Positions 3,484 through 60,663 of a stretch of 64,000 nucleotides of DNA are shown here, piece after piece. Position numbers and translations under genes: made by a program. Within the stretch, counting starts at the first letter, position 1; each line of letters opens with the position of its first letter. The stretch lies in the IMG/VR virus record IMGVR_UViG_3300028654_000001, positions 1 to 64,000 of that record; one strand, given 5' to 3'. The notes beneath the pieces were generated by a model. That model did not search any database. It had not been told where the DNA came from and was given only the letters and a program-made list of their open reading frames with translations.

Positions 3484-4545
3484 GTGATCGATCCCCTCAT
3501 CCTTCGAGTCGCTGGCCGTTACCGGACAGCTCAAGACGATGACTTTTGGGATAAGGCCGTTGAAGATCTGGCTAGGTTCAACAGCAATTATGCCAAAGTC
3601 CAACGAAAACCGGAGGACACTAAGACCCTACGAAGTACTCTCGTTGGAATAGACAAGTCTATCGGATTCCAAGTCTGGGCTAAGAAGTGCTTGGATTCTA
3701 GGGTATACGACTCAGTGCTTGCAATACTGAGAAGGGTTGTAGCTGCAGTAAAAAGCAAGGTAACCACTGAACCAGAGATGTTAGGTCTCATCAACGAGTT
3801 CAAGGATATAGCTCAAAAAGCGCTATCCACCGCAGCTCCGGGATCCTTTGAGTACAGTGGTTTCAAGGTTCTCAATTCCCAACATATCGATGAGGGTAAG
3901 TGTCTTAGAACACTTGAGGGTATTGATTACCTGAAGGCGCTGTTCAAGAAGCGTTTGGTTGAAGACATCTTGGATCAGAGTCTGTCCAAAGTCATCTTGG
4001 TCTTGGATGCGGGATCCACAGCTTTCCTTCACAGTGGTACTAGAGAACTGACACTATCTGTTGACCAACTGTCTACCGGAAAGAGTGGTAGGTTCATCAA
4101 GTGGGTGAATGAGACACTTCTCCACGAACTTGGGCACTACATCCATAGAAACTACCTCTCGGATGATGCTAGAAGATCTTGGGATACTCCCTGGGATGAT
4201 CAGGGTCTTGAATCTCTTGCCAACCCAAACTATCGAGCTCCAGGTGACAGAGATGAGAAGCTCAAGGATCTCGACATTGTCACCGAATACGGCAAGGTTG
4301 ACAAGTACGAGGACTTTGCTGAAACCTTCCTAGTCTTCATGGTGGCCCCGGAGAAGTTGACTCCAACAGCCAAGTTCAGGATGCAACGAGCCCTGTCTCT
4401 CTCGGGTCTCTACGGTAAACCAGTGATGAGACTTGCGGGAGAAGATCCTATTGTTCGAGCAGTAGTCACTCGCTACTCACTCTCCATCCCTAGCATCATG
4501 TCGAAGGCAGATTCCCCTCCTCTGCGAGATTCCTCTCGCTTGTAA
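3484..4545 (+). CDS. Zincin (HExxH) metallopeptidase-like protein with N-terminal RVAGRY tag
   Basis: LLHELGHYIH plus downstream EYGKVDKYEDFAETF; paralogous to 22318..23595. Confidence 0.75.
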   Translation: MIDPLILRVAGRYRTAQDDDFWDKAVEDLARFNSNYAKVQRKPEDTKTLRSTLVGIDKSIGFQVWAKKCLDSRVYDSVLAILRRVVAAVKSKVTTEPEMLGLINEFKDIAQKALSTAAPGSFEYSGFKVLNSQHIDEGKCLRTLEGIDYLKALFKKRLVEDILDQSLSKVILVLDAGSTAFLHSGTRELTLSVDQLSTGKSGRFIKWVNETLLHELGHYIHRNYLSDDARRSWDTPWDDQGLESLANPNYRAPGDRDEKLKDLDIVTEYGKVDKYEDFAETFLVFMVAPEKLTPTAKFRMQRALSLSGLYGKPVMRLAGEDPIVRAVVTRYSLSIPSIMSKADSPPLRDSSRL

Positions 4546-5765
4546 GCATTCTCAACCCGATTCTGCAAGATGGATAGGGACTCAGGATCATTCTCAATCC
4601 CAATGCAATCGAAGTCCTCTTCTACGGCAGCTACGAGGGTTGTTCCGGAGCCGGCGAATGGATCGATCAACACACCACCAGACGGGGTCACAAGCTTCAC
4701 GAAGTAGCGCATGAGCTTCAAGGATTTTACGGTTGGGTGCTCATTGACGAGACCGTCATCGAGACCGTCATTCTTCTCTTTCGTGGAGGGTTTAGATTGG
4801 TAGAGAAATGAATCTTCATAGTCTGGTTCGAAGACTTTGAAGAACCTAGAAGCCCCTGGTTCTTGTCTCTCTAGGATCCCTATAGGGCACCTTGGGGCGC
4901 ACTCGTAGATGGGGAGATTCTCGTTCCCATAGACATGGGCATTTGGTTTCCCATCTCCAGCATCAGAGCCAGTGTTGTAAAAACCTCCTGGACGTTTCCC
5001 TCCTGGGTTCCCACGCTGGTCTCCCTTGATCACCTTGAAACCAACTCTCTTGCAACACAAGTTGTGGGAAAGAACAATGTTTGCAGGCCATCTTCCTAAT
5101 GGATGGCACTCAATCCCAGTACCTGGAGGGGCAGCCACTTTAGCCGCTTCGGGCTTAGCCGTATGCCCACTTTTCTTCCAGGACTCTGGTCTGTCCGGCT
5201 CATCCCAATCTGTGTAGACTCTGGCTGAATCAATATTGAGCGCCCCAGTACCGTACTTGAGGAGATTTTCGATCACTCTCCCACTGATTGGCTTTCGAAT
5301 AAGCCACCAGTCCTCTACCGCCGGCTTTAGTCCGGTATGGTGACCTGACCACCTCTCAGCTTCTTCAGGGAAACCTTCCGCTAAGAGGGCCTTTCTGATA
5401 TCCAGTCCCTTCTTGTAACCTTGCGAAAACACGTGAGTTACGCGATCACGTATCTCGAATCCGGATCTTTCAAGGGCCATTCCTGTATGATGACTCGTAC
5501 GGGGAAGCGCCCAGACCAATCCAAAAGCCCCGGGCTTGAGGATTCGGTAGACCTCGACGAACACCTCTACAAGGAAGTTCTGGAAGGCCATGAGTTCAGC
5601 ACGCTCAGCGGCTAACTCATCCTCAGTATCTGGTTTGAAGTGATCCCACTTTCGGCCCATCATCCGAATCCCACTTGGTGGATCAGTAACCAATGAGTCG
5701 ACAGAGGATTCTTGGATTGACTTGAGAACCTCCCGACAATCCCCAGGGATGATCTCGAACTTCAT
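4473..5765 (-). CDS. DNA N6A/N4C methyltransferase, beta class
   Basis: GDCREVL, VTDPPS (motif IV variant), HPTVKS and DPFAGSGTT (motif I). Confidence 0.9.
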   Translation of the reverse strand: MKFEIIPGDCREVLKSIQESSVDSLVTDPPSGIRMMGRKWDHFKPDTEDELAAERAELMAFQNFLVEVFVEVYRILKPGAFGLVWALPRTSHHTGMALERSGFEIRDRVTHVFSQGYKKGLDIRKALLAEGFPEEAERWSGHHTGLKPAVEDWWLIRKPISGRVIENLLKYGTGALNIDSARVYTDWDEPDRPESWKKSGHTAKPEAAKVAAPPGTGIECHPLGRWPANIVLSHNLCCKRVGFKVIKGDQRGNPGGKRPGGFYNTGSDAGDGKPNAHVYGNENLPIYECAPRCPIGILERQEPGASRFFKVFEPDYEDSFLYQSKPSTKEKNDGLDDGLVNEHPTVKSLKLMRYFVKLVTPSGGVLIDPFAGSGTTLVAAVEEDFDCIGIENDPESLSILQNRVENAYKREESRRGGESAFDMMLGMESE

Positions 5766-6022
5766 CAGCCTGCCCGAGGGGGGAGACTCGAGTTCCTCCC
5801 AGTTGGCTCATATTGGGCCAGCAATTCCGGTATTGTGAGTCTCAAGGTATCCCCGAGCCCTATCCTGAGAACCCTCACAATAGTATCCTCTTCTCCATCT
5901 CCATCTTCGATGGACTTCACCCAGTAACCTTTACCTTGGTTTGAGTTTGGTGACCGATCTCTAAGATAGATCCCAGCACGAAGCCAGTTAGGATAGGTGT
6001 AAACTATTGGATCTTCAGACAT
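5765..6022 (-). CDS. Hypothetical protein
   Basis: Coupled to the MTase start; CGGTGTA 13 nt upstream. Confidence 0.65.
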   Translation of the reverse strand: MSEDPIVYTYPNWLRAGIYLRDRSPNSNQGKGYWVKSIEDGDGEEDTIVRVLRIGLGDTLRLTIPELLAQYEPTGRNSSLPPRAG

Positions 6023-6035
6023 ATTGTCACTCTAC

Positions 6036-6061
6036 TACACCGGATACCTAACCCCGGTGTA
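6036..6061. promoter_or_regulatory. Back-to-back CGGTGTA promoter-like elements
   Basis: TACACCG at 6036-6042 and CGGTGTA at 6055-6061 between divergent genes; same arrangement at 1390-1415 and 32619-32645. Confidence 0.65.
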
Positions 6062-6120
6062 GTATAATATGAACTTTTTTGTTGAGATCCAGGTCCCTCA
6101 AACGTAGTAAAGAGAAAGCT

Positions 6121-7338
6121 ATGACGTTTCTGTTATTTCTCATATGTCCGCTAGTAGTAGCTGTAGGGGGTTTTCTACTCTTCAAGGAAATTACATGGAA
6201 GGAGATGGGGCTTCTCGTCTTGGCCGAACTCATCGTAGCAGGAGTTTCAGTGGCCATAGTGTACAACCTGAATACGTCGGATGATGAGGTATGGAACGGT
6301 TGGGTCACCAACAAAAAGCAGGAGTGGACTTCTTGCTCTCACTCCTACTCATGCAACTGCCACCAAGTAGAAACCTGTTCTGGATCTGGAAAGAACAAAA
6401 CCTGCTCTTCTTCGGAACACTGTGATACCTGCTACGAACACAGCAACGATTGGAACTGGGTTATTTACACGTCGAACAAGGAGTCGATCGACATAGACCG
6501 AGTTGACCGACAAGGTGTTAGTACCCCTCCTCGATGGGCCTCAATTAGAATTGGGGACCCTACTGCTCAGATCCACAGCTACACGAGCTACATCAAGGCC
6601 GCCCCTGATACTCTATTCAGGCACCAAGGTATTACCGAAAAGTATGCCAACAAGATTCCAAAGTACCCGGGGAGAGTCTACGACTACTACCACATCAATC
6701 GATTGGTCACGCAGGGACTCTCAGCTACAGATCCTCAAACTTGGAACGAAGGGCTCGAGAAGATCAACTCTGATCTAGGAGCAAAGAAGCAAGCGAACAT
6801 GATCGTGGTCCTAACCACCGAAGCTGATTCCTGGTACTACGCCTTGGAACAATCTTGGGTCGGCGGAAAGAAGAACGACGTTATCCTGGTCATCGGCATG
6901 GATGCCACCACAGGCAAAACCCAATGGGCTCAGGTCATGTGCTGGACAACAGCAAAGATCTTCGAGATCAAGCTCCGGGATGCCGTGATGGATCTTCCAT
7001 CAATCACCCCCGAAGCCACTCTCCGAGTTATGCACGACAATGTGGATCAGTTCTTCAAGCGCAAGCCCATGAAGGACTTCGAGTATCTGCAGGCGAGCAT
7101 TACACCTTCAGGAACCGAGTATACCATCTCCATACTCATCAGCCTCATCATTGCTGGACTTCTCATCTGGCTCTTCGAGGTGAGGGATATCTTCGGAGAT
7201 GAAGGAACTGCTAGTGCATTTGGTAGATCCTCTAAGAACCGGTGGGATGTCCCTCCTTGGTCTGATACCAATGATACCGGTGGTTTCAAGGTCCTATCAT
7301 CGAGAAACCAAACTAACCATTTCAAACATCACTTTTAG
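6121..7338 (+). CDS. Membrane protein with Cys-rich extracytoplasmic domain
   Basis: Two N-terminal TM segments, CSHSYSCNC...CDTCYEH, and a C-terminal TM segment; lies upstream of a LemA-like gene. Confidence 0.75.
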   Translation: MTFLLFLICPLVVAVGGFLLFKEITWKEMGLLVLAELIVAGVSVAIVYNLNTSDDEVWNGWVTNKKQEWTSCSHSYSCNCHQVETCSGSGKNKTCSSSEHCDTCYEHSNDWNWVIYTSNKESIDIDRVDRQGVSTPPRWASIRIGDPTAQIHSYTSYIKAAPDTLFRHQGITEKYANKIPKYPGRVYDYYHINRLVTQGLSATDPQTWNEGLEKINSDLGAKKQANMIVVLTTEADSWYYALEQSWVGGKKNDVILVIGMDATTGKTQWAQVMCWTTAKIFEIKLRDAVMDLPSITPEATLRVMHDNVDQFFKRKPMKDFEYLQASITPSGTEYTISILISLIIAGLLIWLFEVRDIFGDEGTASAFGRSSKNRWDVPPWSDTNDTGGFKVLSSRNQTNHFKHHF

Positions 7339-7377
7339 ACAACTACTACAACAACAAAGGAGTGCAATAGCACCAAC

Positions 7378-7938
7378 ATGAGCACCGCCGTCAAAATCAT
7401 CCTAGCCTGTGTAGGAGCCTTGTTCTTAGTTACCCTCATCAGCATCTTCTCTATCATTGGAATCCACAACGATTGCGTGCATCAGGAGAGCGGACTAAAA
7501 GCTCAGTACTCTCAAGACCAAAATAATTACAGCTCGTACTTCGACAAGATCAAGGAGATGGCCCAAGTTCCTGATATGGCCGCTGACAAGCTGAAGGAAC
7601 TCTATGACGGTGCTATGAAGGGCCGCTACGGGGCTGATGGCTCCAAGGCTATGTTCCAGTTCATTCACGAGCAGAACCCTAACTTCGATCAGTCGATGTA
7701 TACCAAGCTGCAGCAAGCCATCGAAGCGGGCCGTAACTCATTTGAAGCTGATCAGAAGACTCTCCTCGACAAGAAACGCGTCTACGAGAACGTCTTGGGG
7801 TCATTCCCCGGTAGCTTCTTCGCCGGCATGATGGGATTCCCGAAGCTTGACCTAGCAAAGATCGATATTGTTATCAACGACGCTACTGCCGAAGCTTTCA
7901 GAACTAAGCGAGCAGGCCCGATCAATCTGAAGAACTAA
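7378..7938 (+). CDS. LemA-like membrane-anchored helical protein
   Basis: AAGGAG SD; N-terminal TM; helical body ending YENVLGSFPGSFFAGMMGF, like the LemA C-terminal motif. Confidence 0.6.
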   Translation: MSTAVKIILACVGALFLVTLISIFSIIGIHNDCVHQESGLKAQYSQDQNNYSSYFDKIKEMAQVPDMAADKLKELYDGAMKGRYGADGSKAMFQFIHEQNPNFDQSMYTKLQQAIEAGRNSFEADQKTLLDKKRVYENVLGSFPGSFFAGMMGFPKLDLAKIDIVINDATAEAFRTKRAGPINLKN

Positions 7939-7956
7939 GCCCCGTTTGAGCCACTA

Positions 7957-7992
7957 AAGAAGGCCACTCGCTGAAAGGCTGGTGGCCTTCTT
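7957..7992. terminator. Hairpin between convergent genes
   Basis: AAGAAGGCCAC / GTGGCCTTCTT 11-bp inverted repeat. Confidence 0.65.
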
Positions 7993-8144
7993 GGTTACAG
8001 CTCTGGGATCTCGTACACGAAGGTGTTGTTCCCCTTCACCGTGATCTTGAGTGAATAGAGATCGATGATCAAGATCCTAGAAGCGTCGGGTCACTTTACT
8101 TTGAAGGCCACCAACAGATGCATACATAAGTACACTACTGATTA

Positions 8145-12810: not shown

Positions 12811-13137
12811 TACGGTCTAACAAGGAATTCCTCCTTTAGTACCAACTTCAAGTATTCGGCAAGTTAGGTTGAAGATCTATGTGGCACTCACACAACACCC
12901 GGATCTATTATGGATGATTCTTAAGGTGTGAGTTCGAACAGGTAGAGGGTACTCCAAACCCTAAACTTGATTTCAGCATAAGTCTCTGGCTCAACGTCGT
13001 ATCGGTTGTGTGGATTTGGGTGCCAATGGCGCAGTTGCCAAACAAGTCTCACACTTTCCTAATAATTAACCGGCTATACTAAAACCCACTAGACCTAATA
13101 CACTTTGAGAAAGACCTTATGAGCCATTCCTAAAAAC

Positions 13138-14634
13138 ATGACGGTCGAGAGATTCTCCAATCAAGCCTCAACCACATTATTTACCTCTGTAGGTACTGGA
13201 GATCTTAGTATCTCAGTTCAGGCTACAACCAACTTCCCAGGCTCACCCGAGTTCAGGATCAGAATCGGTCAAGAACTCATGTTGGTGACCGGAGTCTCTG
13301 GTACCACTTGGACGGTAACCAGGGGGATTGAAGGAACAACCCCAGCTTCACATGCACCAGGTTCGATCGTCGTAGCGGTACTGACCTCGGGTGCACTTAC
13401 TGAGATGAGGGCTGAGATCGAAGCTGAGATCCCTTCGGGTACAATTCAGACCACTGATCCTCGCCTGGCCGATGATCGAACAGCTTCAGGAATCCGAACA
13501 GAAACAACCGTTGTAGCTATCTCTTCAGCAACAGCACCTACTCCTGGACAAGTCCTGACTGCTACGAGTGGAACTGCTGCTGACTGGAAGACCGTACCGA
13601 CACCACCAACCATCACTAGCCATGGTTCTGCAGCAGCCGGTGATGTTGTTCGACTCGTCTCTGCCGAAGTCCTTGCTCAGGCCCTGGCTGACTCTACTAG
13701 TCATGCTTCCTCGCTAATTGGTGTGTGGAATGGTGTTACTCCAGTTTCATTCTCTACTCAGCCTGTTGTAAATTTTGATTCTTCCCCAATCGTTGGAGCC
13801 CCATGTTATGTTTCAGCATCCGTTGCAGGAGCATTAACCTGCACAATCCCTGGCGTAGGCTACGTTAGTGTACCGCAGGACTTGTTGGTACTCGAAGATA
13901 AGTCTGTTGGGACAGCTTACGCAGCCAGGGTTGGGATCAATAAAGCTATGACAGGATCTCTGTCGGCTCGTGATGATTTCAAGCGCTATGCAGCACAACT
14001 AACTGGAATGAACCTAGCCAAGGCTGAGTTTTTTGGAAGTGACTTTACCGCAAGTGAACTACAAGATACTGGTACTGGTCCGATGCTCCCTCTTACATTT
14101 GGAACGTGGACTCAGCCGTGCCTACCCAGTTCTCAATATTCTAGTATTTATACGAACACAGCTGGAACAGTATTGTCCGTCAAAAAAGTTCTACCTGCTG
14201 CAAATCTAGCAACACAGAAGTGGGCAATGAGTGTGCGCTTTAGACAAGATGTTGCTGGCTACGAATTGATCCTTGCTCTTCGCCGAGCGAATGTCGATGG
14301 GGTAACTTTCACGGAGACTGCCCAAGTTGGCTTCAGTGCGTACGTAGGACATTCAACTCAACTCCTCTTTGGTGCTGGTAACTTTGACCCAGCCGACGGG
14401 GTATGGGATGTTAGGACTCCGACTGCTGCATACGGTACAATTGGCGTAACTTGGCATCAAGGCGTGATGTACTCGAAGGGTGATGGCAACATTTATTGTA
14501 ATTTAGATAATGCTGGGGTACTGTCTTTGCCGATAGCTCCATCGGCGGCTACAGGAATGGTGGAGCTCTGGTGCAATACCAACAGCCTGCAAATGGATTG
14601 GCTGTACCTGGTCAACGAGAGAGTGGACTACTAA
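13138..14634 (+). CDS. Tail fibre / receptor-binding protein paralogue 1
   Basis: N-terminal ~97 aa shared with 19699 and 61132 (ERFxNQAST...PEFRIRIGQELML...VTRGxEGTT); Thr/Ser/Gly-rich beta C-terminus. Confidence 0.75.
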   Translation: MTVERFSNQASTTLFTSVGTGDLSISVQATTNFPGSPEFRIRIGQELMLVTGVSGTTWTVTRGIEGTTPASHAPGSIVVAVLTSGALTEMRAEIEAEIPSGTIQTTDPRLADDRTASGIRTETTVVAISSATAPTPGQVLTATSGTAADWKTVPTPPTITSHGSAAAGDVVRLVSAEVLAQALADSTSHASSLIGVWNGVTPVSFSTQPVVNFDSSPIVGAPCYVSASVAGALTCTIPGVGYVSVPQDLLVLEDKSVGTAYAARVGINKAMTGSLSARDDFKRYAAQLTGMNLAKAEFFGSDFTASELQDTGTGPMLPLTFGTWTQPCLPSSQYSSIYTNTAGTVLSVKKVLPAANLATQKWAMSVRFRQDVAGYELILALRRANVDGVTFTETAQVGFSAYVGHSTQLLFGAGNFDPADGVWDVRTPTAAYGTIGVTWHQGVMYSKGDGNIYCNLDNAGVLSLPIAPSAATGMVELWCNTNSLQMDWLYLVNERVDY

Positions 14635-19698: not shown

Positions 19699-22167
19699 GT
19701 GACAACTGAACGCTTCGTCAATCAAGCAAGTACAGCTTTGTCCTCATCGGTTGGAGCTGGTGACCTAACCTTCTCAGTCCAGAGTACTACCCATTTTCCG
19801 ACTCAACCTGAGTTCAGGATTCGAATTGGCCAAGAACTCATGTTGGTAACCGGAGTCTCGGGTACCTCTTGGACAGTGACCCGTGGGATCGAAGGGACTA
19901 CCGCGGTTTCACATGCACCAGGTTCGACCGTTGTAGCTGTTCTCACTGGTGGTGGACTCGATGAGATGCGAACGGAGATCGAAGCTGAGAACAAGACTCT
20001 CAACTATGTAGCCATCGATGGTAGTGTAGATGACATGCCAGCATTTACTGCTAAATTAGCTTCAGCAGCAAGTACTGGGTATCGAGTACAACTGAATGCC
20101 GGGAATACAATTCAGTTCAAGACACCCCCTGATGGTAGTGGTACTTATGCTCCACCAAATTCTACTCCAAACCTGAGTAGTGGGGAGTACATGACGTGTG
20201 CTCCAGGTACAAATCTCAGGTTTGACATGACCTATCGCTTCGGGTTGTATGGGAGAGCTAACCTGTCCCCTGGGAGCACCGTTGCTTCTCCTCCTGCAAC
20301 CAGGGCTGCCAACAACAACATAATTATAGTCAACCCCTGGGGTATAACTCCTGCAGTTGGGTACGTTATCTGGGTTGAGCAGTACATGGGAGTTACCCCG
20401 CAAGTGAGCGGGTGTACATATACTATCAAGGAACTTGGTGTTTCCACCATAGGGATCACTGACGTAACGGCCACCACTCTCTATGGGGGTGGCGGGACTC
20501 TCAACGGACTGACCCTCAAGCTCAACATTGATGGGGCTGGAGAGCAGACACTTACGTTATCCGGAGCTGGGAATACAACAACCCTTATCACTCTCATTGC
20601 AGCGATAGTTGTTAAGTGGCCTTCTTTGCTGCAAGTGGGAACTGGTGGTGCATCAGGGAACAACCTACTCATCTCCTCGAAGTCGATTGTGATCGGAGCT
20701 GGTACCGCAAACACAGCTCTAGGTCTCACCGCTGGTGTTCCAACCTATGTTGCTGTTCTGCTCGACCGATCTATTGTGTGGGAGCATTCAATTGGCGACT
20801 CAGTTACCAGTGCCCCCGACTACCCGAAGGACATCTTACTTGACTTCACAGGAGCTAATGTCAGTGGGTACGCAAACCAGCTTATTGAGTTCACGCAGGC
20901 CCAAAGGGCTACAGTCAATGGACTCAACTATCAACTAACGAATGACCAGATCCCGTTCCTCGGTGGGACTGCTACTCTTGCATTTGATGTAGCAAGTCGC
21001 GAATGCACACTATCGAACTCAACGATTGAATTTCCGAATAACCCCTACTACATAGGGAGCAATGGCTTTTACGGTCAGTCAAATGAAGGAACCTTGCTGT
21101 GGAATAATCGAATCCGCAATGCCAGAGCGCAGGGGTACTCCTTCATGGACTGTTATGCCTGCAACGCCATTGGGAACATAACCTCTGACTGTGATTGGGG
21201 TCAAGTTGCACAAGTATTTGTGGATGGTACTTTTGGTTGTTTAGATTGTGCATTCGTTGCATGTGCTGACATTGGAAGTGAAGTAGGGCAGTGGCTTTGG
21301 GGTTCTAAAAGAACAAAAACCCTTGGGTTATCGAGCACTAAGAACCCCCAGTACGGGCTTCTAGTTGATCGCAATAATGAGACCGCAACATTTACAAATT
21401 GCAGCTATACCAAGGCTCCTATTGGTATTTATATCGACGCTACTGCAACTGGAACCTCATTCACCCAGCTGAATACTGACGAGTGTCTTACTGGAATTGT
21501 TATTGCTGGGGCAGCTACCATATCACAGTGGCATCACCACAGCACTCGAACTGATCCTGGTGCAACAGGGGTGTTTGTATCTGGAGTCGGCACTAACATC
21601 ATCCGCGACATAGATCTGAAGATGAGTGGAAGTGGAATCGCGGTTGATGTTGGTACTACGGGTACTCTACTACTGGATGGTGGGAGAATAGAGACGGGAC
21701 CTACAGGTTATTGTTTGCGTGTACAGACAGCAGCTCGTATCAGACTGTCCAACATAACCTTTGCTGGTGGTGTTGGGATCTCTTGCTCAAGTGGTACTAT
21801 TGAGATAGGGCCAAACTGTGACTTTAGTGCTATAACAGAGAATCAACAATTTCTCGTGATTGCCCCGGGTTTGGTTACATTTCAGCAGACCGGTGGGGTT
21901 CTCTCGTATGCTGGCAGCAATCGATTCATACTACTAAGTGAGTGCTACAATACCACCATAGAGATATCGGCCTCAGCCTCAGCGAGTGGTGTTGGCCTAC
22001 CTGGGATACCTGGACTTCAGTTCACGGTAGTAAATAACAACACAAACCCGATGTTCGTTATCTCTAGGGCGGCAGGTGATACCGGAGTTACGATTGCCGG
22101 AGGCAAGACAGCTATTGTTAGGGTAGACTCGACTAACCACTGTAAGCGGGTAACCGCTGATCTATGA
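19699..22167 (+). CDS. Tail fibre / tailspike paralogue 2 with probable parallel beta-helix
   Basis: Shared N-terminal anchor; DGSVDDMPAF start of a pectin-lyase-like region followed by repetitive beta strands. Confidence 0.8.
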   Translation: MTTERFVNQASTALSSSVGAGDLTFSVQSTTHFPTQPEFRIRIGQELMLVTGVSGTSWTVTRGIEGTTAVSHAPGSTVVAVLTGGGLDEMRTEIEAENKTLNYVAIDGSVDDMPAFTAKLASAASTGYRVQLNAGNTIQFKTPPDGSGTYAPPNSTPNLSSGEYMTCAPGTNLRFDMTYRFGLYGRANLSPGSTVASPPATRAANNNIIIVNPWGITPAVGYVIWVEQYMGVTPQVSGCTYTIKELGVSTIGITDVTATTLYGGGGTLNGLTLKLNIDGAGEQTLTLSGAGNTTTLITLIAAIVVKWPSLLQVGTGGASGNNLLISSKSIVIGAGTANTALGLTAGVPTYVAVLLDRSIVWEHSIGDSVTSAPDYPKDILLDFTGANVSGYANQLIEFTQAQRATVNGLNYQLTNDQIPFLGGTATLAFDVASRECTLSNSTIEFPNNPYYIGSNGFYGQSNEGTLLWNNRIRNARAQGYSFMDCYACNAIGNITSDCDWGQVAQVFVDGTFGCLDCAFVACADIGSEVGQWLWGSKRTKTLGLSSTKNPQYGLLVDRNNETATFTNCSYTKAPIGIYIDATATGTSFTQLNTDECLTGIVIAGAATISQWHHHSTRTDPGATGVFVSGVGTNIIRDIDLKMSGSGIAVDVGTTGTLLLDGGRIETGPTGYCLRVQTAARIRLSNITFAGGVGISCSSGTIEIGPNCDFSAITENQQFLVIAPGLVTFQQTGGVLSYAGSNRFILLSECYNTTIEISASASASGVGLPGIPGLQFTVVNNNTNPMFVISRAAGDTGVTIAGGKTAIVRVDSTNHCKRVTADL

Positions 22168-22317: not shown

Positions 22318-23595
22318 CTAAAGATCTACTACCCGACGGATCTGATAGTGTCCACTACTAGAAACCAAAGGATATTCTTGGTTCCGCTCAGAGGATAGAA
22401 CTGATCGGAAAGACTCAAGTTGGTCTCGAGTGAGACCCCCTCCAGACACATAACCCTCAAACACTTCCGCGAAAGCCTCTTCAATGTTGGAGCTAGCGTA
22501 CTCACCCAATGGTGCAACCGGCTTAGGATTACCCTCTTCATCAGTAGGTCCCTGCGGGTAATCCCTGAATCTGTCTGTAGTCTTGGTTTGAACTAAGGCA
22601 TTGAATCGAGCTCGATTCGCTGGGGTCATGAACTTGAACCAGTATCGGTGCCCAAGCTCATGGATCACGATACGGGTAACGAAACCCTCTGGCTTATTCC
22701 TAATATAGACTTGGTCCAGATCGTGGTTATACTCCCCAGCATCCCCAGAACTACTGTAACCCCACTTCTGAGCAAGCTCAATCTCTTCTTGGGTTTTCTT
22801 GTGATTCTTGGCCTCAACAAACATCACCCCGTACCACAACTTTCCGAAACCATTGTTTTTCAACATCTGTTGTGCTCGGTTGATGTACTTGATGTAATCA
22901 CGAACGTCATTCCGACTCACTGAGTCATCAATGACAACAACCTTGGCGCTGTTGAGATCAAATTCCTTAGGAACCGTAGAGTAGAAGTCATCGATTGGAT
23001 CTTCCCCGTGTTCCTTCTTGTACTCAGCGGTAGCCTTGGCATCAGCGTAGAGGTGCTTCATCAAAGCATCGAAGACTCTGGTAGCCGGAGCCCACACCAC
23101 TTCTGGATGCCACCGATACTGATCAACAGCATCCATGGCCTTAGTCCACTTTGCGTGATATGGCTCGTATTCAGGGTATTTGCGAATGAACTCATCAGAT
23201 CCGTGAAGCTTTCGGATGTTGTCCCCAGTTCGCTCTTCGATCTCATCCAGGAACTTCTCGCGCTTCTCACTTACCTCTCTGTAATTACTGGCTATTTTTT
23301 CGTATTCTGTGTACACCTCGAAAACCTGACCTTTGGTCTTTGCCAAAAGGTTCTCGAACTTGATCCGCTCCCTAGAACCGGTGAACACAATGTTCATGCC
23401 ATGCCTTTGGAAGAGTACCTGATCCCCTAGGTTCCTCAGGAACTCAATGAGAGCCTTGTGCTTGTCATCCATCTCATGCGGGGACTTGATGACGGCAGTC
23501 CAGCCCCTCTTGACCCCCATGAGCCATTGCTTGGTCAAGATGTCTGCTTGAATGAAGCGAGCAGCTACTCGGAGAGTTAAGACGTCTTCGCGCAT
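22318..23595 (-). CDS. Zincin (HExxH) metallopeptidase-like protein with N-terminal RVAARF tag
   Basis: IVIHELGHRYW and EYASSNIEEAFAEVF motifs. Confidence 0.8.
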   Translation of the reverse strand: MREDVLTLRVAARFIQADILTKQWLMGVKRGWTAVIKSPHEMDDKHKALIEFLRNLGDQVLFQRHGMNIVFTGSRERIKFENLLAKTKGQVFEVYTEYEKIASNYREVSEKREKFLDEIEERTGDNIRKLHGSDEFIRKYPEYEPYHAKWTKAMDAVDQYRWHPEVVWAPATRVFDALMKHLYADAKATAEYKKEHGEDPIDDFYSTVPKEFDLNSAKVVVIDDSVSRNDVRDYIKYINRAQQMLKNNGFGKLWYGVMFVEAKNHKKTQEEIELAQKWGYSSSGDAGEYNHDLDQVYIRNKPEGFVTRIVIHELGHRYWFKFMTPANRARFNALVQTKTTDRFRDYPQGPTDEEGNPKPVAPLGEYASSNIEEAFAEVFEGYVSGGGLTRDQLESFRSVLSSERNQEYPLVSSSGHYQIRRVVDL

Positions 23596-55715: not shown

Positions 55716-55767
55716 GGGCGGGTACCGTATACCTAAAACTGCCTGACTGTAAACAGATAACGGATAC

Positions 55768-56202: not shown

Positions 56203-56370
56203 AGAACCTCCTAACAGGAGGCTATCCTAACCATGAGCTAATATCAAGGAGATCCTAAGTGGTATAACTTAAGTACCCCTGTACAACCCAGTAACTTCAA
56301 TGATAACAGGATCTTGGTTGAGTTGAAGGGAAATGTAGATCATTCGTCAAGCCCAACCCTGGACTATCAA

Positions 56371-56643
56371 TCACGTGCCTGGGGGCAGATACCCCAGGAA
56401 AGGATCAGGAGCCTTCGGTTCTAGATCCACTTCGGTCATCTCGATCTCAGAAAATTCTTTATTTAGGACATCTTGAATGATCTTTATCAAGTTTTCTCTG
56501 GCCTCTTCAGGAGTATTACCTTCAGTCCGAAAGGGTTCCGTGTTAGACCAAGGAAAAGATCTACATGCAGCAATGTATAGGTTTTTCGACGAATAGGGTG
56601 GCCATTGCTTGGTCCTCCGGTAGGTAATAATCTGAAACTTCAT
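56371..56643 (-). CDS. HicB-like N-terminal domain protein
   Basis: YIAAC...TEGNTPEEARENLIKII; GGTGTA 9 nt upstream. Confidence 0.6.
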   Translation of the reverse strand: MKFQIITYRRTKQWPPYSSKNLYIAACRSFPWSNTEPFRTEGNTPEEARENLIKIIQDVLNKEFSEIEMTEVDLEPKAPDPFLGYLPPGT

Positions 56644-56666
56644 AGAATAAATTACACCAGACTTTA

Positions 56667-57005
56667 GTGAGATCGGAGTTCCTCGTGCGTAGTACTAGTA
56701 TGTCCAGGAAGAATTCCAAGGTTCTCAGTGACCTACTCAGCAAGTTGAACCAAGAACTACTAACTGTAGGCTTGAAGAATGATACTGGAATATCAGGGTG
56801 TTTTCGCTTCCGGCTCCCCTTGGGTCAGTACCCGCTCATCGGTGTACTTCGGGACACTGGGCTCTACCTATGCCGTCAAAGCGTTGACTTCATTGAAGTT
56901 CTAGGTTCCGAGATTATTCCCCTGGACACCCATGTCCAGGACATGGTTTCCAAGATCAAGGATCGATACAACACCCTAGTTCGCTGTTACAGCCCAGAGA
57001 GTTGA
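56667..57005 (+). CDS. Hypothetical protein
   Basis: Directly precedes infA; start may be ATG 56700. Confidence 0.55.
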   Translation: MRSEFLVRSTSMSRKNSKVLSDLLSKLNQELLTVGLKNDTGISGCFRFRLPLGQYPLIGVLRDTGLYLCRQSVDFIEVLGSEIIPLDTHVQDMVSKIKDRYNTLVRCYSPES

Positions 57006-57006
57006 A

Positions 57007-57231
57007 ATGCCAAGAGAAGACCTAATTCAAATTGAAGGAACTGTAACCTCTGCCCTCGGAGGCGGTCAGTATGAGATCAAGCCACTCGACGGATCAGAAA
57101 GTATCAGAGCTCAACTCTGCGGAAAGATGAAGAAACATAACATCCGTCTGATCCTAGGGGACAAGGTGAGGGTCGGGGTACCCCCCTATGATACGAGCCA
57201 CGGCATCGTCACTTGGAAGCTCAGGAGTTAA
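57007..57231 (+). CDS. infA: Translation initiation factor IF-1
   Basis: MPREDLIQIEGTV...AQLCGKMKKHNIRLILGDKVRV...PYD...GIVTW. Confidence 0.92.
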   Translation: MPREDLIQIEGTVTSALGGGQYEIKPLDGSESIRAQLCGKMKKHNIRLILGDKVRVGVPPYDTSHGIVTWKLRS

Positions 57232-57517
57232 CCTTCCGCTCGATACTTGCAACCGCCTGCAGCATCCGGGCTCGAGCTACCGTGTTGGCCGTATGTATTA
57301 GGATCTCCGGAGCTTTGAACTCTGGGTTCCGATAAACCTCAGCCTCGAGATAGGTCAGGACATCATACCCTGTCCCGGCATTTTCGCCCAGGTCGTGGTC
57401 GAGTGAGATCACCTCACAGGGAGCTCTACGAAGCTCCCTGAGTGCGTCCAAAGCAGTCCTGACCCAAACCCATTCACTTGAGGGTGGGAACCTCTCATCA
57501 TCAAGCCAGAGCTTCAC
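57221..57517 (-). CDS. Cyclic-phosphate-processing receiver-domain protein
   Basis: KLWLDDER...ISLDHDLG...TGYD...IHTAN. Confidence 0.8.
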   Translation of the reverse strand: MKLWLDDERFPPSSEWVWVRTALDALRELRRAPCEVISLDHDLGENAGTGYDVLTYLEAEVYRNPEFKAPEILIHTANTVARARMLQAVASIERKVNS

Positions 57518-57771
57518 CTATTAAGAGCCTCATACTCAGCTATCTGCTCCTTACGCTTTCCTCGAGCGGCAAGACTCATCATCTCCAAGATCAGATTCTC
57601 AGTAGCCTCCTGCTCGGTTTCTCCCCAGGACCCAATACTTCCGAACACGGCAATGAACCCATCAGGGGCATTCGGATAAAGCTCCCTCTCCCGCTTGGCA
57701 CCCTTCGAGTCCAAGACATCCATCATGGGCTTCTTCGCAGGGTAGGTATGAAAGTTGTTTTTCGTAGGCAT
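57514..57771 (-). CDS. HicB-like domain protein
   Basis: FIAVF...SWGETEQEATENL; AAGGAG before MPTKNN. Confidence 0.5.
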   Translation of the reverse strand: MPTKNNFHTYPAKKPMMDVLDSKGAKRERELYPNAPDGFIAVFGSIGSWGETEQEATENLILEMMSLAARGKRKEQIAEYEALNR

Positions 57772-57811
57772 CGGTGCAGCTCCTTGAGGGAAAGATACAC
57801 CGATGCTACTC

Positions 57812-58189
57812 TTAGAGAATCTCGAGTGGCCCCCACCAAGCAATGCTGCCAGACTTTGAATTAAGATAAAAACAACTAATTCCAGTTATAACATATAGCC
57901 CATTTGGTTCATTCCTGACAATGGCCAACTCAGGTTCTTGTACGCCACGCTGGACTATATACATCCCGGGCACCGTTGGCGTGCCACAATGGGGAATTGA
58001 GGTCACCACTTCCAGATCGGACACTGGTGCCCCAGAAATTGTTACATCTTTTCCCACGGTTGGAAACTCATCCCACTTCACCGTGGCTATCCTATCCGAA
58101 TCAGAACCCATCAAGGTTCCTTTCCGTCCTTGGTGGACACCCTCTCGTTTAGGCCCGATGTATCGTACTCGTATCGCTTCTTTTGTCAT
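57812..58189 (-). CDS. Hypothetical protein
   Basis: CGCGTA 10 nt upstream; PTVPGMY...WWGPL module. Confidence 0.6.
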   Translation of the reverse strand: MTKEAIRVRYIGPKREGVHQGRKGTLMGSDSDRIATVKWDEFPTVGKDVTISGAPVSDLEVVTSIPHCGTPTVPGMYIVQRGVQEPELAIVRNEPNGLYVITGISCFYLNSKSGSIAWWGPLEIL

Positions 58190-58475
58190 AATATAGGAGT
58201 ACGCGCCAGCTGGGTGAATCTCACCAAATTAAACCAACGAGACTTTGAACCACTGAGGCAAGGCCATTGGTCAGGTTATCCCAACTGATGTTCGTAATAA
58301 CTGTCATCAAACTCCATACACCAGGCGCCTAAAAGTTTGTGTGAACCCGTGATCCAACCTAGGGGTTTGTACTTGTACTCAAATACGTGATAATCATTAC
58401 AAGATAGCACCAATTACTTAAATAGTTGACTAACTTTGTTGAGATCTGAGACCCTCAAACGTAATATGTAACATC

Positions 58476-58703
58476 ATGCCATACAGCAATAAGGAAAAGG
58501 CTTCTGAAGCTGAGGCTAAAGCGAGGGCAACCGCTCATCAACTTTACACTCAGGGGATGAGGCCATTGATAGGAATCAGCCCTGAGGGGAAATACAAGGG
58601 GCACTATCAGGTCAAGAGCAACAACTCCACCAATCTAACTCTGACTGTTGTAGAGACAGCCAATGGGAAACTCACAACACTTTGGGATATTCCGAGGGTA
58701 TGA
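58476..58703 (+). CDS. Hypothetical protein
   Basis: AACGTA 12 nt upstream. Confidence 0.55.
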   Translation: MPYSNKEKASEAEAKARATAHQLYTQGMRPLIGISPEGKYKGHYQVKSNNSTNLTLTVVETANGKLTTLWDIPRV

Positions 58704-59107
58704 TGGAACTCTCAACTCAACCTATTATTAGCACTTGCCTCAGTCACCTACCCAAGGACATCTGGGAAGCTCGCCTTAGTTTGTTCAGTAATTCTTTGGC
58801 TCATGAGTGTGTGGAGCGCCGCGGGTGTCAGTGGTTCATCAGTACGTCTTTTGTGGACTACTCAAATGCCTACCCTAGTGAGGAGCTTGCTTTTGAGGCT
58901 CTTAAGGAGATCATTAGCACTGAGTCACGCATCAGGGCTCTAAAAAACATCAAGGACCTTGCCAGGGCGTCCACTGTCAGTGTTCTCACCAAACGACTAC
59001 CAAACATGACTACAGCTCCCTGTCCACCACCCTGGAAAGAGGAATCCGATCTCAACCCAAAACTCCACAACCTATGGAACTTATACTTCAATGGAATCGG
59101 AAAATAG
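58700..59107 (+). CDS. Hypothetical protein
   Basis: ATGA overlap with the previous stop. Confidence 0.55.
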   Translation: MMELSTQPIISTCLSHLPKDIWEARLSLFSNSLAHECVERRGCQWFISTSFVDYSNAYPSEELAFEALKEIISTESRIRALKNIKDLARASTVSVLTKRLPNMTTAPCPPPWKEESDLNPKLHNLWNLYFNGIGK

Positions 59108-59109
59108 AC

Positions 59110-59295
59110 ATGGACAAGAACACTAAAGACCGGAGTGAGTTAGGATACCTATTAGCTGGGGACTTCATCCTCAACAGCAAAGGGCAAGCTTCTTGGAAAA
59201 CTAACTACCCAGTACTGAAGGAGATCAGAGAGGAGGCGCGTAGGCTAGGGTCATCCCGAATCTTCTACGACTCGATAACTGTCACGATGGCCTAA
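59110..59295 (+). CDS. Hypothetical protein
   Basis: ATG immediately after the previous stop. Confidence 0.5.
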   Translation: MDKNTKDRSELGYLLAGDFILNSKGQASWKTNYPVLKEIREEARRLGSSRIFYDSITVTMA

Positions 59296-59325
59296 GTGAA
59301 CTTCCTTTGATAGCCCTGAGTAGAC

Positions 59326-60663
59326 ATGGTCACCGACATTGTCATAACCCATCGGGTTGCTGAAAGATTCATCCAAGCTTCCTCCCCAATAGTGGTCAAG
59401 GAAGTGCAGGACAGGATTGAAGTTTCGGGACCTTACGACAAGATGAAGGACTTGATCCCGTACTTGAGGGGTAAGTTTGAGTATCGCGGCCAGGATCATA
59501 CTTGGTGGACACCAAGTACCAAGATGACCAACCTTAAGATGAAGAACCTTAAGAAGAAGGTTGATGAGGTCAATGGGAAGTTTGGTCCTGACCCTGTGAA
59601 GGTAGAGGAGTCCGCGGAAGCTAAGGCGGAAAGGCTTGAGGAAGCTAAGAAACTTCTCAGCAAAGCTGTTCACATGCGGGTGCCCGGACTCACCTTCAGT
59701 CCTATCGGGGTCGATGGAGCTCAGTTGACAGGGGCTCTCACTGACTTGAGGGTGGATATTAACAAGTCTGGCGGGAATTACGGACCTGAGTTCTCAAAGT
59801 TTCAAGCTCACCTAATCAAGCCGACGGAATTCGAAAATCTTTTGGAGGCGGTCGCGGATCAAGGGCGGCTTGTGGCCAAAGCCCAAGCTGACTTATCTAG
59901 CCTACTTCCACGCAAGTTCCCGAGTTTGAAGATTGATGTTGGAACCAACAATGGGAGTTACCTGCTAATAGTCTCAGGGAAAACCTACGACTTCAAGGAT
60001 GAAATCAAGAAGCGAGTACCAGTGACCTTCAATGGTCAGGGGAGCTTCTGGTGGGCTCCAATCCATCAAGTAAAGGAGGCTCAAGTAAAGGAATTAATTG
60101 AGTATCTTGAGGGTGAGGAACGGAAACTAGCCGAGAAGTGGAAGGCGGATCGGGAGCCAGCAGTTGAGAGAAAGAGGCCTAACCAAAGGGGTGAACATTG
60201 CATTAATTGTGGTGGTTGGGTAGACGCTGGTGAGGGTTATCTAGTCAACCACTACGATTCTGAAGAGGGTGACTTTGTTTGGAAGGTCAAGCACAAGGAT
60301 CCAGATGACTGCGCTAGGATTCGAAATGAGGTGAAGATTCGAAGTGAGGCAGCTAGGACTAAAGGCCAAGCTCGAAGGAACCTCATGCTCATGTGTGAGA
60401 AGTCCGAGTACTATGTGCAGGGTACTGGCCTCAAACCGCCTGGGGAGCAAGTCTGGATTGACAAGCATTCGCTTGGGTACGGCGGTGGGACCTGGGTAGT
60501 CATTGAACCCGGTGAGAGTTACTTCTGGTACGTCAACAACAATGGTGCCGACGGTGATGATTGGTCACGCAATAACGTCACTACGGGCGGAGCTGGTGCC
60601 ATTGGGTATCGACTCCCCTATACGGATGAAGCCAAAGTCTTGATTGAAGTGGCCAAAGAGTGA
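59326..60663 (+). CDS. Multi-domain protein with N-terminal RVAERF tag
   Basis: THRVAERFIQAS; two VSGxxYDxKD..W repeats; CINCG...H...C zinc site. Confidence 0.75.
   Translation: MVTDIVITHRVAERFIQASSPIVVKEVQDRIEVSGPYDKMKDLIPYLRGKFEYRGQDHTWWTPSTKMTNLKMKNLKKKVDEVNGKFGPDPVKVEESAEAKAERLEEAKKLLSKAVHMRVPGLTFSPIGVDGAQLTGALTDLRVDINKSGGNYGPEFSKFQAHLIKPTEFENLLEAVADQGRLVAKAQADLSSLLPRKFPSLKIDVGTNNGSYLLIVSGKTYDFKDEIKKRVPVTFNGQGSFWWAPIHQVKEAQVKELIEYLEGEERKLAEKWKADREPAVERKRPNQRGEHCINCGGWVDAGEGYLVNHYDSEEGDFVWKVKHKDPDDCARIRNEVKIRSEAARTKGQARRNLMLMCEKSEYYVQGTGLKPPGEQVWIDKHSLGYGGGTWVVIEPGESYFWYVNNNGADGDDWSRNNVTTGGAGAIGYRLPYTDEAKVLIEVAKE

What the first reader, a model, noticed from the sequence alone, without database searches (positions are those of the whole stretch)
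3484..60663. Third tag, RVAxR[FY]xxA, at the N-terminus of three large putative late proteins
Seen: MIDPLILRVAGRYRTA (3484+), MREDVLTLRVAARFIQA (23595-) and MVTDIVITHRVAERFIQA (59326+). The 3484 protein has a degenerate second copy near its C-terminus (DPIVRAVVTRY). All three genes have the CTTAT-like upstream element shared with the fibre genes, not GGTGTA. Established analogy: T4 internal proteins carry a short N-terminal capsid-targeting sequence removed by the prohead protease. Inference: a capsid-targeting or maturation-cleavage signal for head-packaged, injected proteins.
Basis: partly seen in the sequence, partly recalled or inferred. Interest (0 to 1): 0.65.

Follow-up and report, generated by a model that had tools for sequence, protein, structure and literature searches.

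The report
Shared docking tag on huge-phage proteins
A 512-kb soil phage puts the same ~17-residue peptide on the ends of about two dozen unrelated proteins, and this address label is read either by the phage's own ClpX unfoldase or by the assembling capsid; neither system has been described before.

Summary
The three N-termini are real, but they are a small part of a genome-wide system. In this complete 512,571-bp phage, 12 ORFs (non-circular profile) to about 24 ORFs (iterated profile) carry M-x-(D/S)-(D/P)-L-x-(L/I)-x-R-V-(A/V)-x-R-(F/Y)-x-x-A, with the Arg 6-9 residues after the start codon. Reversed and shuffled translations give 0 hits. Codons vary synonymously, so the peptide is what is selected. 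The tagged proteins are unrelated: at least 4 zincin-like peptidases, a topoisomerase IB, a DRAT-like ADP-ribosyltransferase, a J-domain protein, a conserved 130-aa protein beside TerL, and many of unknown function. The tag also occurs at C-termini and in tandem. AlphaFold2 models it as a free helix. It is conserved across a family-level clade of huge phages and absent from six other huge phages that encode ClpX. Tagged genes cluster at two places, beside terL and beside a phage clpX. That ClpX has its own zinc-finger N-domain subtype. The tag core (P-x-L-R-V-[AV]) resembles the SspB XB peptide (PALRVVK), which tethers proteins to the ClpX N-domain from any position. I rate "modular docking tag" at about 0.9. 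No cleavage motif follows the tag.

The parts
3484..3534 (+). N-terminal tag (residues 1-17) of a 353-aa zincin-like metallopeptidase (gene 3484-4545, GTG start, HELGH at residue 214)
4441..4476 (+). Degenerate second copy of the tag (EDPIVRAVVTRY, residues 320-331) in the C-terminal tail of the same protein
   Evidence: 3.5 bits; C-terminal copies in the homolog family
3466..3472 (+). CTTATAG upstream element, 11 nt before the GTG start; no Shine-Dalgarno sequence
23545..23595 (-). N-terminal tag (residues 1-17) of a 425-aa zincin-like metallopeptidase (gene 22318-23595, HELGH at residue 312). Tag and C-tail are disordered in AlphaFold2; the body has pLDDT above 90
59326..59379 (+). N-terminal tag (residues 1-18) of a 445-aa protein of unknown function (gene 59326-60663) with a CxxC zinc-ribbon-like motif
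59307..59313 (+). TTGATAG upstream element, 12 nt before the ATG of the 59326 gene
61113..61119 (+). CTTATAA upstream element, 12 nt before the fibre-like gene 61132+. It is the same class of element as on the tagged genes; this gene is untagged and serves for comparison

Best explanation
The motif is a modular, position-independent docking peptide. It is a roughly 17-residue amphipathic, basic-hydrophobic helix: M-x-(D/S)-(D/P)-L-x-(L/I)-x-R-V-(A/V)-x-R-(F/Y)-x-x-A. This clade of huge phages attaches it to the N-terminus of about two dozen otherwise unrelated accessory proteins, less often to the C-terminus or in tandem, so that one common receptor can recognise them all. I put that part at about 0.9.

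The most likely receptor is the zinc-finger N-domain of the phage's own ClpX AAA+ unfoldase (G000 277071-279446, outside the window). On this view the tag works like the XB tail of the bacterial adaptor SspB (RGGRPALRVVK). It tethers the tagged protein to the ClpX hexamer, which has three N-domain dimers, so tandem or double-ended tags would add avidity. ClpX then unfolds, remodels or, with host ClpP, degrades the tagged protein or whatever that protein holds. The phage has no ClpP, but its ClpX keeps an IGF-like loop.

Shown here: the tag itself, its modularity, its clade distribution, the phage ClpX, the gene clustering, the sequence resemblance to XB, and the clade-specific N-domain subtype. 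Inferred: physical binding to ClpX and what happens after binding.
For: Reality and modularity of the tag.

A ClpX homolog sits inside a minus-strand operon in which 6 of about 9 genes are tagged. It has a ClpX C4 zinc finger, a GYVG pore loop, an 'SMGFGA' IGF-like loop and a D2-small domain, and is split by an intein.

All 17 related records with a ClpX zinc finger have at least 1 tag hit. The two well-covered outgroup records without ClpX (G004, G016) have none.

A tagged gene lies within 3-5 kb of clpX in 6-8 of 16 genomes, against 1.1-1.9 expected. These genes sit in the variable slot flanking clpX, inside an otherwise conserved neighbourhood.

XB is RGGRPALRVVK (PMC3983244) and binds the ClpX zinc-binding domain regardless of its position in a polypeptide (PMC12373786). 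The phage-tag profile picks the XB tail as its best window in 115-117 of about 118 SspB proteins. It aligns in register, and the per-window chance rate is 3e-4 to 3e-3.

N-domain recognition sequences can be N-terminal and transplantable (PMC8808172).

A J-domain co-chaperone family carries 1-3 tandem tags and lies beside clpX in three genomes.

The ClpX N-domain of all 19 tag-clade genomes is a distinct subtype (C-x-FC-x-RPRNEVK). ClpX from tag-less huge phages looks like E. coli ClpX.
Against: Six other huge phages that encode ClpX have no tag, so ClpX is not sufficient. The co-occurrence inside one clade (TerL at least 57% identical) is not phylogenetically independent.

Tagged genes are equally enriched beside terL (8 of 16 genomes), and about 70% lie near neither landmark.

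The XB resemblance covers only half the tag and is modest (about 0 bits, p around 1e-3). The most conserved R-(F/Y) half has no counterpart in XB.

The E. coli N-domain positions that bind XB and MqsA (L12, L13, H23) are not conserved in the phage N-domain.

The one complex prediction gave no answer and counts neither way.

It is not obvious why a core 130-aa protein in the packaging operon and enzymes with a fibre-type upstream element should be ClpX clients.
Confidence: 0.4

Rival explanations
1. Capsid-targeting (cargo-loading) peptide. The tag docks cargo onto a procapsid component (scaffold, inner face of the HK97-type major capsid protein, portal or protease) during head assembly. The tagged enzymes are thereby packaged and later ejected into the host, like T4 internal proteins and Alt, or like encapsulin cargo.
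For: T4 internal proteins and the Alt ADP-ribosyltransferase enter the prohead through 10-20-residue N-terminal capsid-targeting sequences (PMC5694885). Encapsulin targeting peptides are usually C-terminal but sometimes N-terminal (PMC8346489).

The tagged set looks like an injected-effector repertoire: an ADP-ribosyltransferase, at least 4 zincin peptidases, a topoisomerase IB, and a K/E-rich protein with a hydrophobic hairpin and a tag at both ends.

The tagged topoisomerase IB lies between TerL and portal. A tagged, highly conserved, hydrophilic 130-aa protein lies just upstream of TerL. Tagged genes lie within 3 kb of terL in 8 of 16 related genomes against about 1 expected.

About half the tagged genes share an upstream element with fibre-like genes.
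Against: No conserved protease cleavage motif follows the tag. In the P0002 family the tag is only 3-4 residues from the folded domain. C-terminal and tandem copies do not fit a T4-type propeptide. No recognised structural protein, nor the protease, nor the acidic 479-aa scaffold candidate carries the tag, and the neighbours of the capsid gene are untagged. This model does not explain the clustering around clpX or the XB-like core. A tagged J-domain co-chaperone is an odd head cargo. There is no virion proteome for any tag-bearing phage; the Atu_ph07 proteome is unusable because that phage has no tag.
Confidence: 0.3
2. Self-association or another hub. The amphipathic helices bind one another or an unidentified phage or host hub (for example DnaK/Hsp70, DNA, or a membrane or assembly site). 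This gathers the tagged proteins into one body or compartment that involves neither ClpX nor the capsid shell directly.
For: The pattern of conserved hydrophobic positions (-3/-2, +1/+2, +5, +8) is heptad-like. Double-ended and tandem tags would allow cross-linking. A hydrophobic core flanked by basic residues resembles generic Hsp70-binding motifs (my own knowledge), and a J-domain protein belongs to the tagged set.
Against: AlphaFold2 does not pair the N- and C-terminal tags of P0005 with any confidence. The invariant Val and near-invariant Arg argue for a specific partner rather than a degenerate chaperone motif. There is no positive evidence for any particular hub.
Confidence: 0.2
3. Not a protein tag at all: chance, the remnant of a shared ancestral N-terminal domain (paralogy), or a nucleotide-level element for translation initiation on short-leader mRNAs.
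For: P0001 and P0002 are distant paralogs. The genes lack Shine-Dalgarno sequences and have a fixed-distance upstream element.
Against: There are 0 hits in reversed or shuffled translations and in 2.9 Mb of other huge phages. The protein bodies are unrelated (Topoisom_I, DRAT, DnaJ, zincins). Arg uses all six codons and Val all four within the motif. The same peptide occurs at C-termini.
Confidence: 0.02

Closest known systems
SspB XB peptide and other ClpX N-domain (zinc-binding-domain) recognition sequences (UmuD, lambda O, MuA, MqsA 1-34)
   Same: A short linear peptide, functional at any position in a polypeptide, that tethers a protein to the ClpX N-domain. The core L-R-V-V-K resembles the tag core L-R-V-(A/V)-x-R. 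A ClpX with a zinc-finger N-domain is encoded by the same genome and flanked by tagged genes.
   Different: The tag is longer, with an invariant downstream R-(F/Y)-x-x-A, and is predicted to be helical. It is carried by about two dozen viral proteins rather than a single adaptor. The phage N-domain is a distinct subtype that lacks the E. coli contact residues L12, L13 and H23. Binding is untested.
T4 capsid-targeting sequence (CTS) of the internal proteins IPI-III and Alt
   Same: A short (10-20 residue) N-terminal peptide shared by unrelated, non-structural, effector-like proteins, including an ADP-ribosyltransferase. Some of the genes lie in the head-morphogenesis operon (PMC5694885).
   Different: The T4 CTS is strictly N-terminal and is removed by the prohead protease at a consensus site. 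Here no cleavage consensus follows the tag, and C-terminal and tandem copies exist. There is no sequence similarity. Virion location is unknown.
Encapsulin cargo-loading (targeting) peptides, and the encapsulation peptides of bacterial microcompartments
   Same: Short terminal peptides at either end that load unrelated cargo into a protein shell, which in encapsulins is HK97-fold. Microcompartment peptides are amphipathic helices on flexible linkers (PMC8346489 for encapsulins; microcompartments from my own knowledge).
   Different: The consensus differs (encapsulin TVGSL/GSL-type, extended conformation). Encapsulin cargo genes sit next to the shell gene, whereas here the capsid gene's neighbours are untagged. 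Cargo in those systems is never released.
Polyvalent proteins of phages and conjugative elements (Iyer et al. 2017, cited in PMC7824862)
   Same: The same kinds of effector domains (zincin-like metallopeptidase, ADP-ribosyltransferase) that are proposed to be delivered with the DNA.
   Different: There the domains are fused into one giant polypeptide anchored to a head protein. Here they are separate genes, each with its own short tag.

Membership tests
T4-type capsid-targeting sequence | A short N-terminal peptide shared by otherwise unrelated proteins | tested here: met
T4-type capsid-targeting sequence | Followed by a conserved prohead-protease cleavage site and removed on maturation | tested here: not met
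   No conserved residue pattern follows position +8 across the tagged proteins. In the P0002 family the folded domain starts 3-4 residues after the tag. Actual cleavage cannot be tested here.
T4-type capsid-targeting sequence | Strictly N-terminal | tested here: not met
   C-terminal, domain-boundary and tandem copies exist
T4-type capsid-targeting sequence | Bearers are present inside proheads or virions | not testable with these tools
   No cultured clade member and no proteome. Atu_ph07, which has a proteome, lacks the tag.
ClpX N-domain tethering peptide (XB-like) | A ClpX with a C4 zinc-finger N-domain is available in the same system | tested here: met
   PF06689 at residues 5-41 of the 791-aa ClpX; present in 17 of 22 related records
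ClpX N-domain tethering peptide (XB-like) | Sequence resemblance to the XB core (P-A-L-R-V-V-K) | tested here: inconclusive
   It aligns in register and is the best window in about 98% of the SspB proteins tested. However, the score is about 0 bits, the chance rate is 3e-4 to 3e-3 per window, and only half of the tag is covered.
ClpX N-domain tethering peptide (XB-like) | Works irrespective of its position in the polypeptide | tested here: met
   The same motif, in the same orientation, occurs at N-termini, at C-termini, at domain boundaries and in tandem. The property of XB is stated in PMC12373786.
ClpX N-domain tethering peptide (XB-like) | The N-domain keeps the residues that bind XB and MqsA in E. 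coli (L12, L13, H23) | tested here: not met
   The tag-clade N-domains have a short leader and RPRNEVK in place of KSQHEVR. This fits a co-evolved pocket, but it is not the E. coli one.
ClpX N-domain tethering peptide (XB-like) | Physical binding of the peptide to the N-domain | tested here: inconclusive
   The complex prediction returned 'no answer' (score 0.02). This is not evidence either way.
Encapsulin cargo-loading peptide | Cargo gene adjacent to the HK97-fold shell gene, with a conserved GSL/TVGSL-type motif | tested here: not met
   The neighbours of the capsid gene are untagged, and the motif is unrelated.
Paralogous N-terminal domain (common descent) | Bearers share homology beyond the motif | tested here: not met
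   The bodies are Topoisom_I, DRAT, DnaJ, zincin or have no family. Only the zincins are related to each other.

The most novel reading that the evidence does not exclude
The two hotspots are two ends of one pathway. The tag would be a ticket for an ATP-driven protein-loading route in which the phage ClpX binds tagged cargo through its N-domain, unfolds it and hands or threads it into the assembling procapsid. That would be a protein-packaging motor working alongside the DNA terminase. Iyer et al. [quoted passage not shown] Here there would be, for the first time, a defined cargo signal. It would also explain why tagged genes cluster at both clpX and terL, and why clpX lies next to the portal gene in one relative (G002).
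Probability: 0.1. Interest if true: 0.92.

Novelty: new variant of a known kind. Interest (0 to 1): 0.72.

Why it matters
Huge phages carry hundreds of genes of unknown function. A sequence tag that sorts about two dozen of them into one functional class, clients of a single receptor, gives a direct handle on that unknown fraction. If the receptor is the phage ClpX, this would be the first virus-encoded AAA+ unfoldase with its own substrate or adaptor code. That would amount to a viral system for timed proteolysis or remodelling, and a portable tag/receptor pair orthogonal to the E. coli N-domain. If the receptor is the procapsid, it would be the first capsid-targeting signal defined outside T4-like phages. 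It would predict the injected-effector repertoire of an uncultured phage family from sequence alone, and it would offer a cargo-loading tag for very large capsids. Either reading can be tested with a peptide, one small domain and a GFP fusion.

Tried and rejected
(1) Complex prediction of two copies of the ClpX zinc-finger domain (residues 1-62) with a 36-residue tag segment: 'no answer', score 0.02. This is not evidence for or against binding.

(3) RNA evidence for timing or transcription starts: the phage is found only in rhizosphere and soil DNA runs, and no RNA run holds it.

(4) N- and C-terminal tags pairing with each other: AlphaFold2 of P0005 shows two isolated low-confidence helices, so there is no support.

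(5) G010 as a co-loss of ClpX and tags: rejected. It has weak tags (E=0.012) and is only 68% complete.

(6) ClpX/tag co-occurrence as independent evidence: downgraded, because all tag-bearing records form one clade by TerL.

(7) PHROGs, Pfam and PDB sequence searches gave nothing for P0003, the 738-aa, 447-aa, 289-aa, 256-aa, 227-aa and 130-aa tagged proteins, or for the 460-475 kb tagged island.

(8) The exact heptamer CTTATAG as a genome-wide promoter: it is not over-represented (47 against about 66 expected). Only a looser element at a fixed 11-15 nt from start codons holds up.

(9) A search for a ClpP partner in the genome found none, and no T4-type S77 protease.

(10) Literature: no paper in the searchable library describes this motif. 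The UmuD XB-like tether (Neher et al. 2003) could not be read and is cited from memory only.

Full report
**1. What the window is**

The window is the first 64 kb of a single-contig, 512,571-bp virus record (GC 0.49). IMG/VR classes it as complete with direct terminal repeats. It holds an HK97-type major capsid protein, a portal, a head-maturation protease and a large terminase in one long minus-strand operon at 403-420 kb. Near-identical DNA occurs only in rhizosphere and soil metagenomes. By DNA similarity it has no close relative among deposited phage genomes. Its relatives are 200-530-kb IMG/VR contigs that share TerL at 57-78% identity.

**2. The observation**

The three N-termini are exactly as described. 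They are part of something much larger.

- The strict pattern RVAxR[FY]xxA occurs 8 times in the six-frame translation, and 6 of these lie 7-9 residues after a start codon.
- Iterating a 20-column profile gives about 24 ORFs in which the anchor Arg lies 6-9 residues (rarely 10-12) after an ATG, GTG or TTG. The reading frame is usually closed shortly upstream, so these are true N-termini.
- To avoid circularity I built a profile only from proteins of other genomes (133 tag windows from homologs of two families). It finds 12 hits of at least 8 bits in this genome, against 0 in the reversed and 0 in the shuffled translation. Ten of the 12 are N-terminal, and ten lie in proteins unrelated to the training families.
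- The same tag profile gives 0 hits in six other huge phages (2.9 Mb). In the 485-kb phage LR745208 the iterated G000 profile gives only 4 hits of at least 7 bits, and the clade-wide tag profile gives one weak hit.

Within the motif, Arg is encoded by all six codons and Val by all four. Selection therefore acts on the peptide and not on an RNA or DNA element.

The consensus is M-x-(D/S)-(D/P)-L-x-(L/I)-x-R-V-(A/V)-x-R-(F/Y)-x-x-A. Val is invariant and the second Arg is nearly so.

**3. The tag is modular**

The tagged proteins are unrelated to one another:

- four or five zincin-like metallopeptidases with HExxH, including the window genes at 3484 and 23595;
- a type IB topoisomerase, in which the tag replaces the usual N-terminal domain;
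- a DRAT-like ADP-ribosyltransferase;
- a J-domain protein;
- a 447-aa K/E-rich protein with a hydrophobic hairpin;
- a 130-aa hydrophilic protein;
- many proteins with no recognisable family, including the window gene at 59326.

Homologs of the 23595 protein on other huge-phage contigs keep the tag down to 30% identity. In 107 homologs, 47 profile hits are N-terminal and 7 are within 35 residues of the C-terminus. Four more lie at the end of the peptidase domain, before a further extension. Shuffled and reversed controls give none. The C-terminal copy follows the conserved domain end (SFRSVLSS...).

Tandem tags also occur, with two or three in a row before the J-domain in some relatives.

AlphaFold2 with family alignments models the peptidase body confidently (pLDDT above 90 from residue 21). 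The N-terminal tag and the C-terminal tail have pLDDT below 50 and appear as isolated helices that pack against nothing.

Together these results show a free, transplantable terminal peptide, that is, a docking or recognition signal. I put this at about 0.9.

**4. Where the tagged genes lie**

In this genome the tagged genes are scattered, with three concentrations.

*The packaging and head operon.* A tagged 130-aa gene lies just upstream of TerL, and the tagged topoisomerase IB lies directly downstream of TerL, before the portal. The 130-aa protein is a core gene of the clade, with more than 360 homologs at 55-80% identity. Its tag columns (LRVAARF) are 79-100% conserved.

*An island at 460-481 kb.* It consists of small genes of unknown function plus the ADP-ribosyltransferase.

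*A minus-strand operon at 273-282 kb.* Six of about nine genes there are tagged. The large untagged gene in the middle is a ClpX homolog with a ClpX C4 zinc finger, an AAA+ module with a GYVG pore loop, an IGF-like 'SMGFGA' loop and a D2-small domain. It is interrupted in its Walker A motif by a Hint/LAGLIDADG intein. The genome has no ClpP.

**5. Comparative tests**

Among 22 IMG/VR records that hold a homolog of the 23595 peptidase, 17 encode a ClpX zinc finger, and all 17 have tag hits (1-7 at E<=0.01). The two well-covered records with neither (G004, G016) are outgroups by TerL (48% and 37% identity). Three fragmentary in-clade records lack a detectable ClpX: G021 keeps two tags, G010 keeps only weak ones, and G022 has no hit at all.

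Because the tag-bearing records form one clade, this co-occurrence is a clade trait and not independent evidence. ClpX alone does not imply tags either.

Gene order is more telling. clpX lies in a conserved neighbourhood (a nitrilase-like gene upstream, a 'PYSLSRWTD' family downstream), and the variable slots on either side of clpX are where tagged families accumulate. A tag hit lies within 3 kb (5 kb) of clpX in 6 (8) of 16 genomes, against 1.1 (1.9) expected. For terL the figures are 8 (8) of 16 against about 1 (1.5). For the portal there is no enrichment. So there are two conserved hotspots, and about 70% of tags lie elsewhere.

**6. The link to ClpX biology**

The adaptor SspB tethers itself to the ClpX N-domain through its C-terminal XB peptide, RGGRPALRVVK (PMC3983244). 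[quoted passage not shown] The N-domain also binds some substrates directly, and an N-terminal recognition sequence (MqsA 1-34) is transplantable (PMC8808172).

The tag core, (D)P-L-x-L-R-V-(A/V)-x-R, resembles P-A-L-R-V-V-K. In homologs it reads, for example, M-R-M-D-P-L-A-L-R-V-V-R-R-F.

Quantitatively, the phage-tag profiles choose the XB tail as their best window in 115-117 of about 118 SspB proteins and align it in register. The score is only about 0 bits, because XB covers half of the tag. A window that good occurs at 3e-4 to 3e-3 per residue in unrelated sequence. The SspB set is also nearly one evolutionary sample. I treat this as a real but modest resemblance.

Finally, the N-domains of ClpX from all 19 tag-clade genomes form their own subtype: a short leader, C-x-FC-x-RPRNEVK, and an insertion before the second Cys pair. 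ClpX from tag-less huge phages (Atu_ph07, G, Phosso) looks like E. coli ClpX and keeps the L12/L13/H23-type positions that bind XB and MqsA. This is what a co-evolved receptor-ligand pair would look like, but it also means the E. coli contacts are not conserved.

**7. Weighing the explanations**

*ClpX N-domain docking (about 0.4).* This model explains the position independence, the tandem and double-ended tags (avidity for three N-domain dimers), the clustering at clpX, the XB-like core, the special N-domain subtype and the tagged J-domain protein. It does not readily explain the terL hotspot or why packaging-operon proteins should be ClpX clients. What follows binding (degradation with host ClpP, remodelling, or adaptor-like delivery of other proteins) is open.

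*Capsid targeting (about 0.3).* This model explains the terL hotspot, the effector-like cargo (T4 Alt is an ADP-ribosyltransferase loaded by a capsid-targeting sequence; PMC5694885), the fibre-type upstream element and the ejection-protein-like 447-aa protein. It lacks a cleavage site, does not predict C-terminal or tandem tags in the T4 sense, and leaves the clpX linkage and XB resemblance as coincidences.

*A combined pathway (about 0.1).* ClpX would feed tagged cargo to the procapsid, an idea anticipated in general terms by Iyer et al. 2021 (PMC7824862). It would explain both hotspots, but no such pathway has been observed.

*Self-association or another hub.* This takes most of the remainder.

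*Chance, paralogy or an RNA-level signal.* These are excluded.

**8. The upstream element**

CTTATAG (3466-3472) and TTGATAG (59307-59313) lie 11-12 nt before two of the three window genes. Similar heptamers lie 12-15 nt before the fibre-like genes at 61132 and 13138, and before about half of all tagged genes. None is evident before 23595, and Shine-Dalgarno sequences are absent. The fixed short distance suggests a -10-like promoter element giving nearly leaderless mRNAs. That is inference only, and 'late' timing is untested.

**9. Novelty**

The papers I could search describe neither this motif nor any proteome-wide terminal tag in huge phages. Both candidate mechanisms have well-studied prototypes (XB tethering, T4 CTS), so I class it as a new variant of a known kind. 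No sequence was altered and no alternative genetic code was used. No step had to be referred.

Noticed in passing
G000 277071-279446 (-), outside the window (L007:5071-7446): The phage ClpX is split in its Walker A motif (GPSG | TGKT) by an intein of about 350 aa with Hint and LAGLIDADG domains. Relatives have ClpX either with the intein (775-791 aa) or without it (402-493 aa).
   Followed up: partly
Relatives G009, G012, G019, G021 (TerL frames 1120-1131 aa); G003, G004, G008, G018 (portal frames 1092-1584 aa): The TerL and portal matches come as two pieces inside over-long open frames, which suggests inteins in the packaging genes of several clade members.
   Followed up: no
window 3466-3472, 13116-13122, 59307-59313, 61113-61119: A (C/T)T(T/G)AT(A/G)(G/A)-like heptamer sits at a fixed 11-15 nt before start codons, and there is no Shine-Dalgarno sequence. 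This may be a -10-like element giving nearly leaderless mRNAs. The exact CTTATAG is under-represented genome-wide (47 against about 66 expected).
   Followed up: partly
window 13138-14634 (+), 19699-22167 (+), 61132-63999+ (+): Three fibre-like proteins share the same N-terminal domain of about 100 aa (phrog_6427 / 1101 / 8469, tail or tail-fibre protein) with different C-terminal parts. They look like a set of exchangeable receptor-binding fibres.
   Followed up: no
window 4473-5765 (-) and 3484-4545 (+): A DNA methyltransferase gene (phrog_67, 4e-50) converges on the tagged peptidase gene, and the two overlap by 73 nt at their 3' ends. The overlap covers the last few bases of the degenerate C-terminal tag copy and the residues after it.
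   Followed up: no
G000 390170-390800 (-), within or upstream of the 761-aa GNQGxQG collagen-like gene 389275-391560: There are five tandem copies, 126 bp apart, of CTTATAG followed by an ORF start reading VMRSSDGINW... This repeated module lies inside a collagen-like fibre gene region.
   Followed up: no
G000 400110-403485 (-), next to the major capsid gene 403571-404440: Two LAGLIDADG/HNH homing-endonuclease-like genes, one fused to a DNA methyltransferase domain, sit directly downstream of the capsid gene. An Endonuclease VII gene lies between the portal and the protease.
   Followed up: no
G000 413273-414905 (-): Three tandem paralogs of 172-193 aa (…SRDC…KGDAY…GW.GGQGV.WVD…) lie between the tagged topoisomerase IB and the portal. 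Their function is unknown.
   Followed up: no
L044:11311-12666 (+), L100:9066-10307 (+), L042:19957-21159 (+): J-domain proteins beside clpX in relatives carry two or three tandem copies of the tag before the J-domain. The G000 ortholog (249558-250865) has one weak copy.
   Followed up: partly
LR745208.1 near 462990 (+) and 64739 (+): This distant 485-kb phage, which has no ClpX zinc finger, has a variant N-terminal motif (M…LVDRY(L/I)…(R/K)VA.R(Y/F)L.A, 13 residues after the ATG) on two proteins, one of them a zincin homolog. It may be a diverged form of the tag.
   Followed up: no
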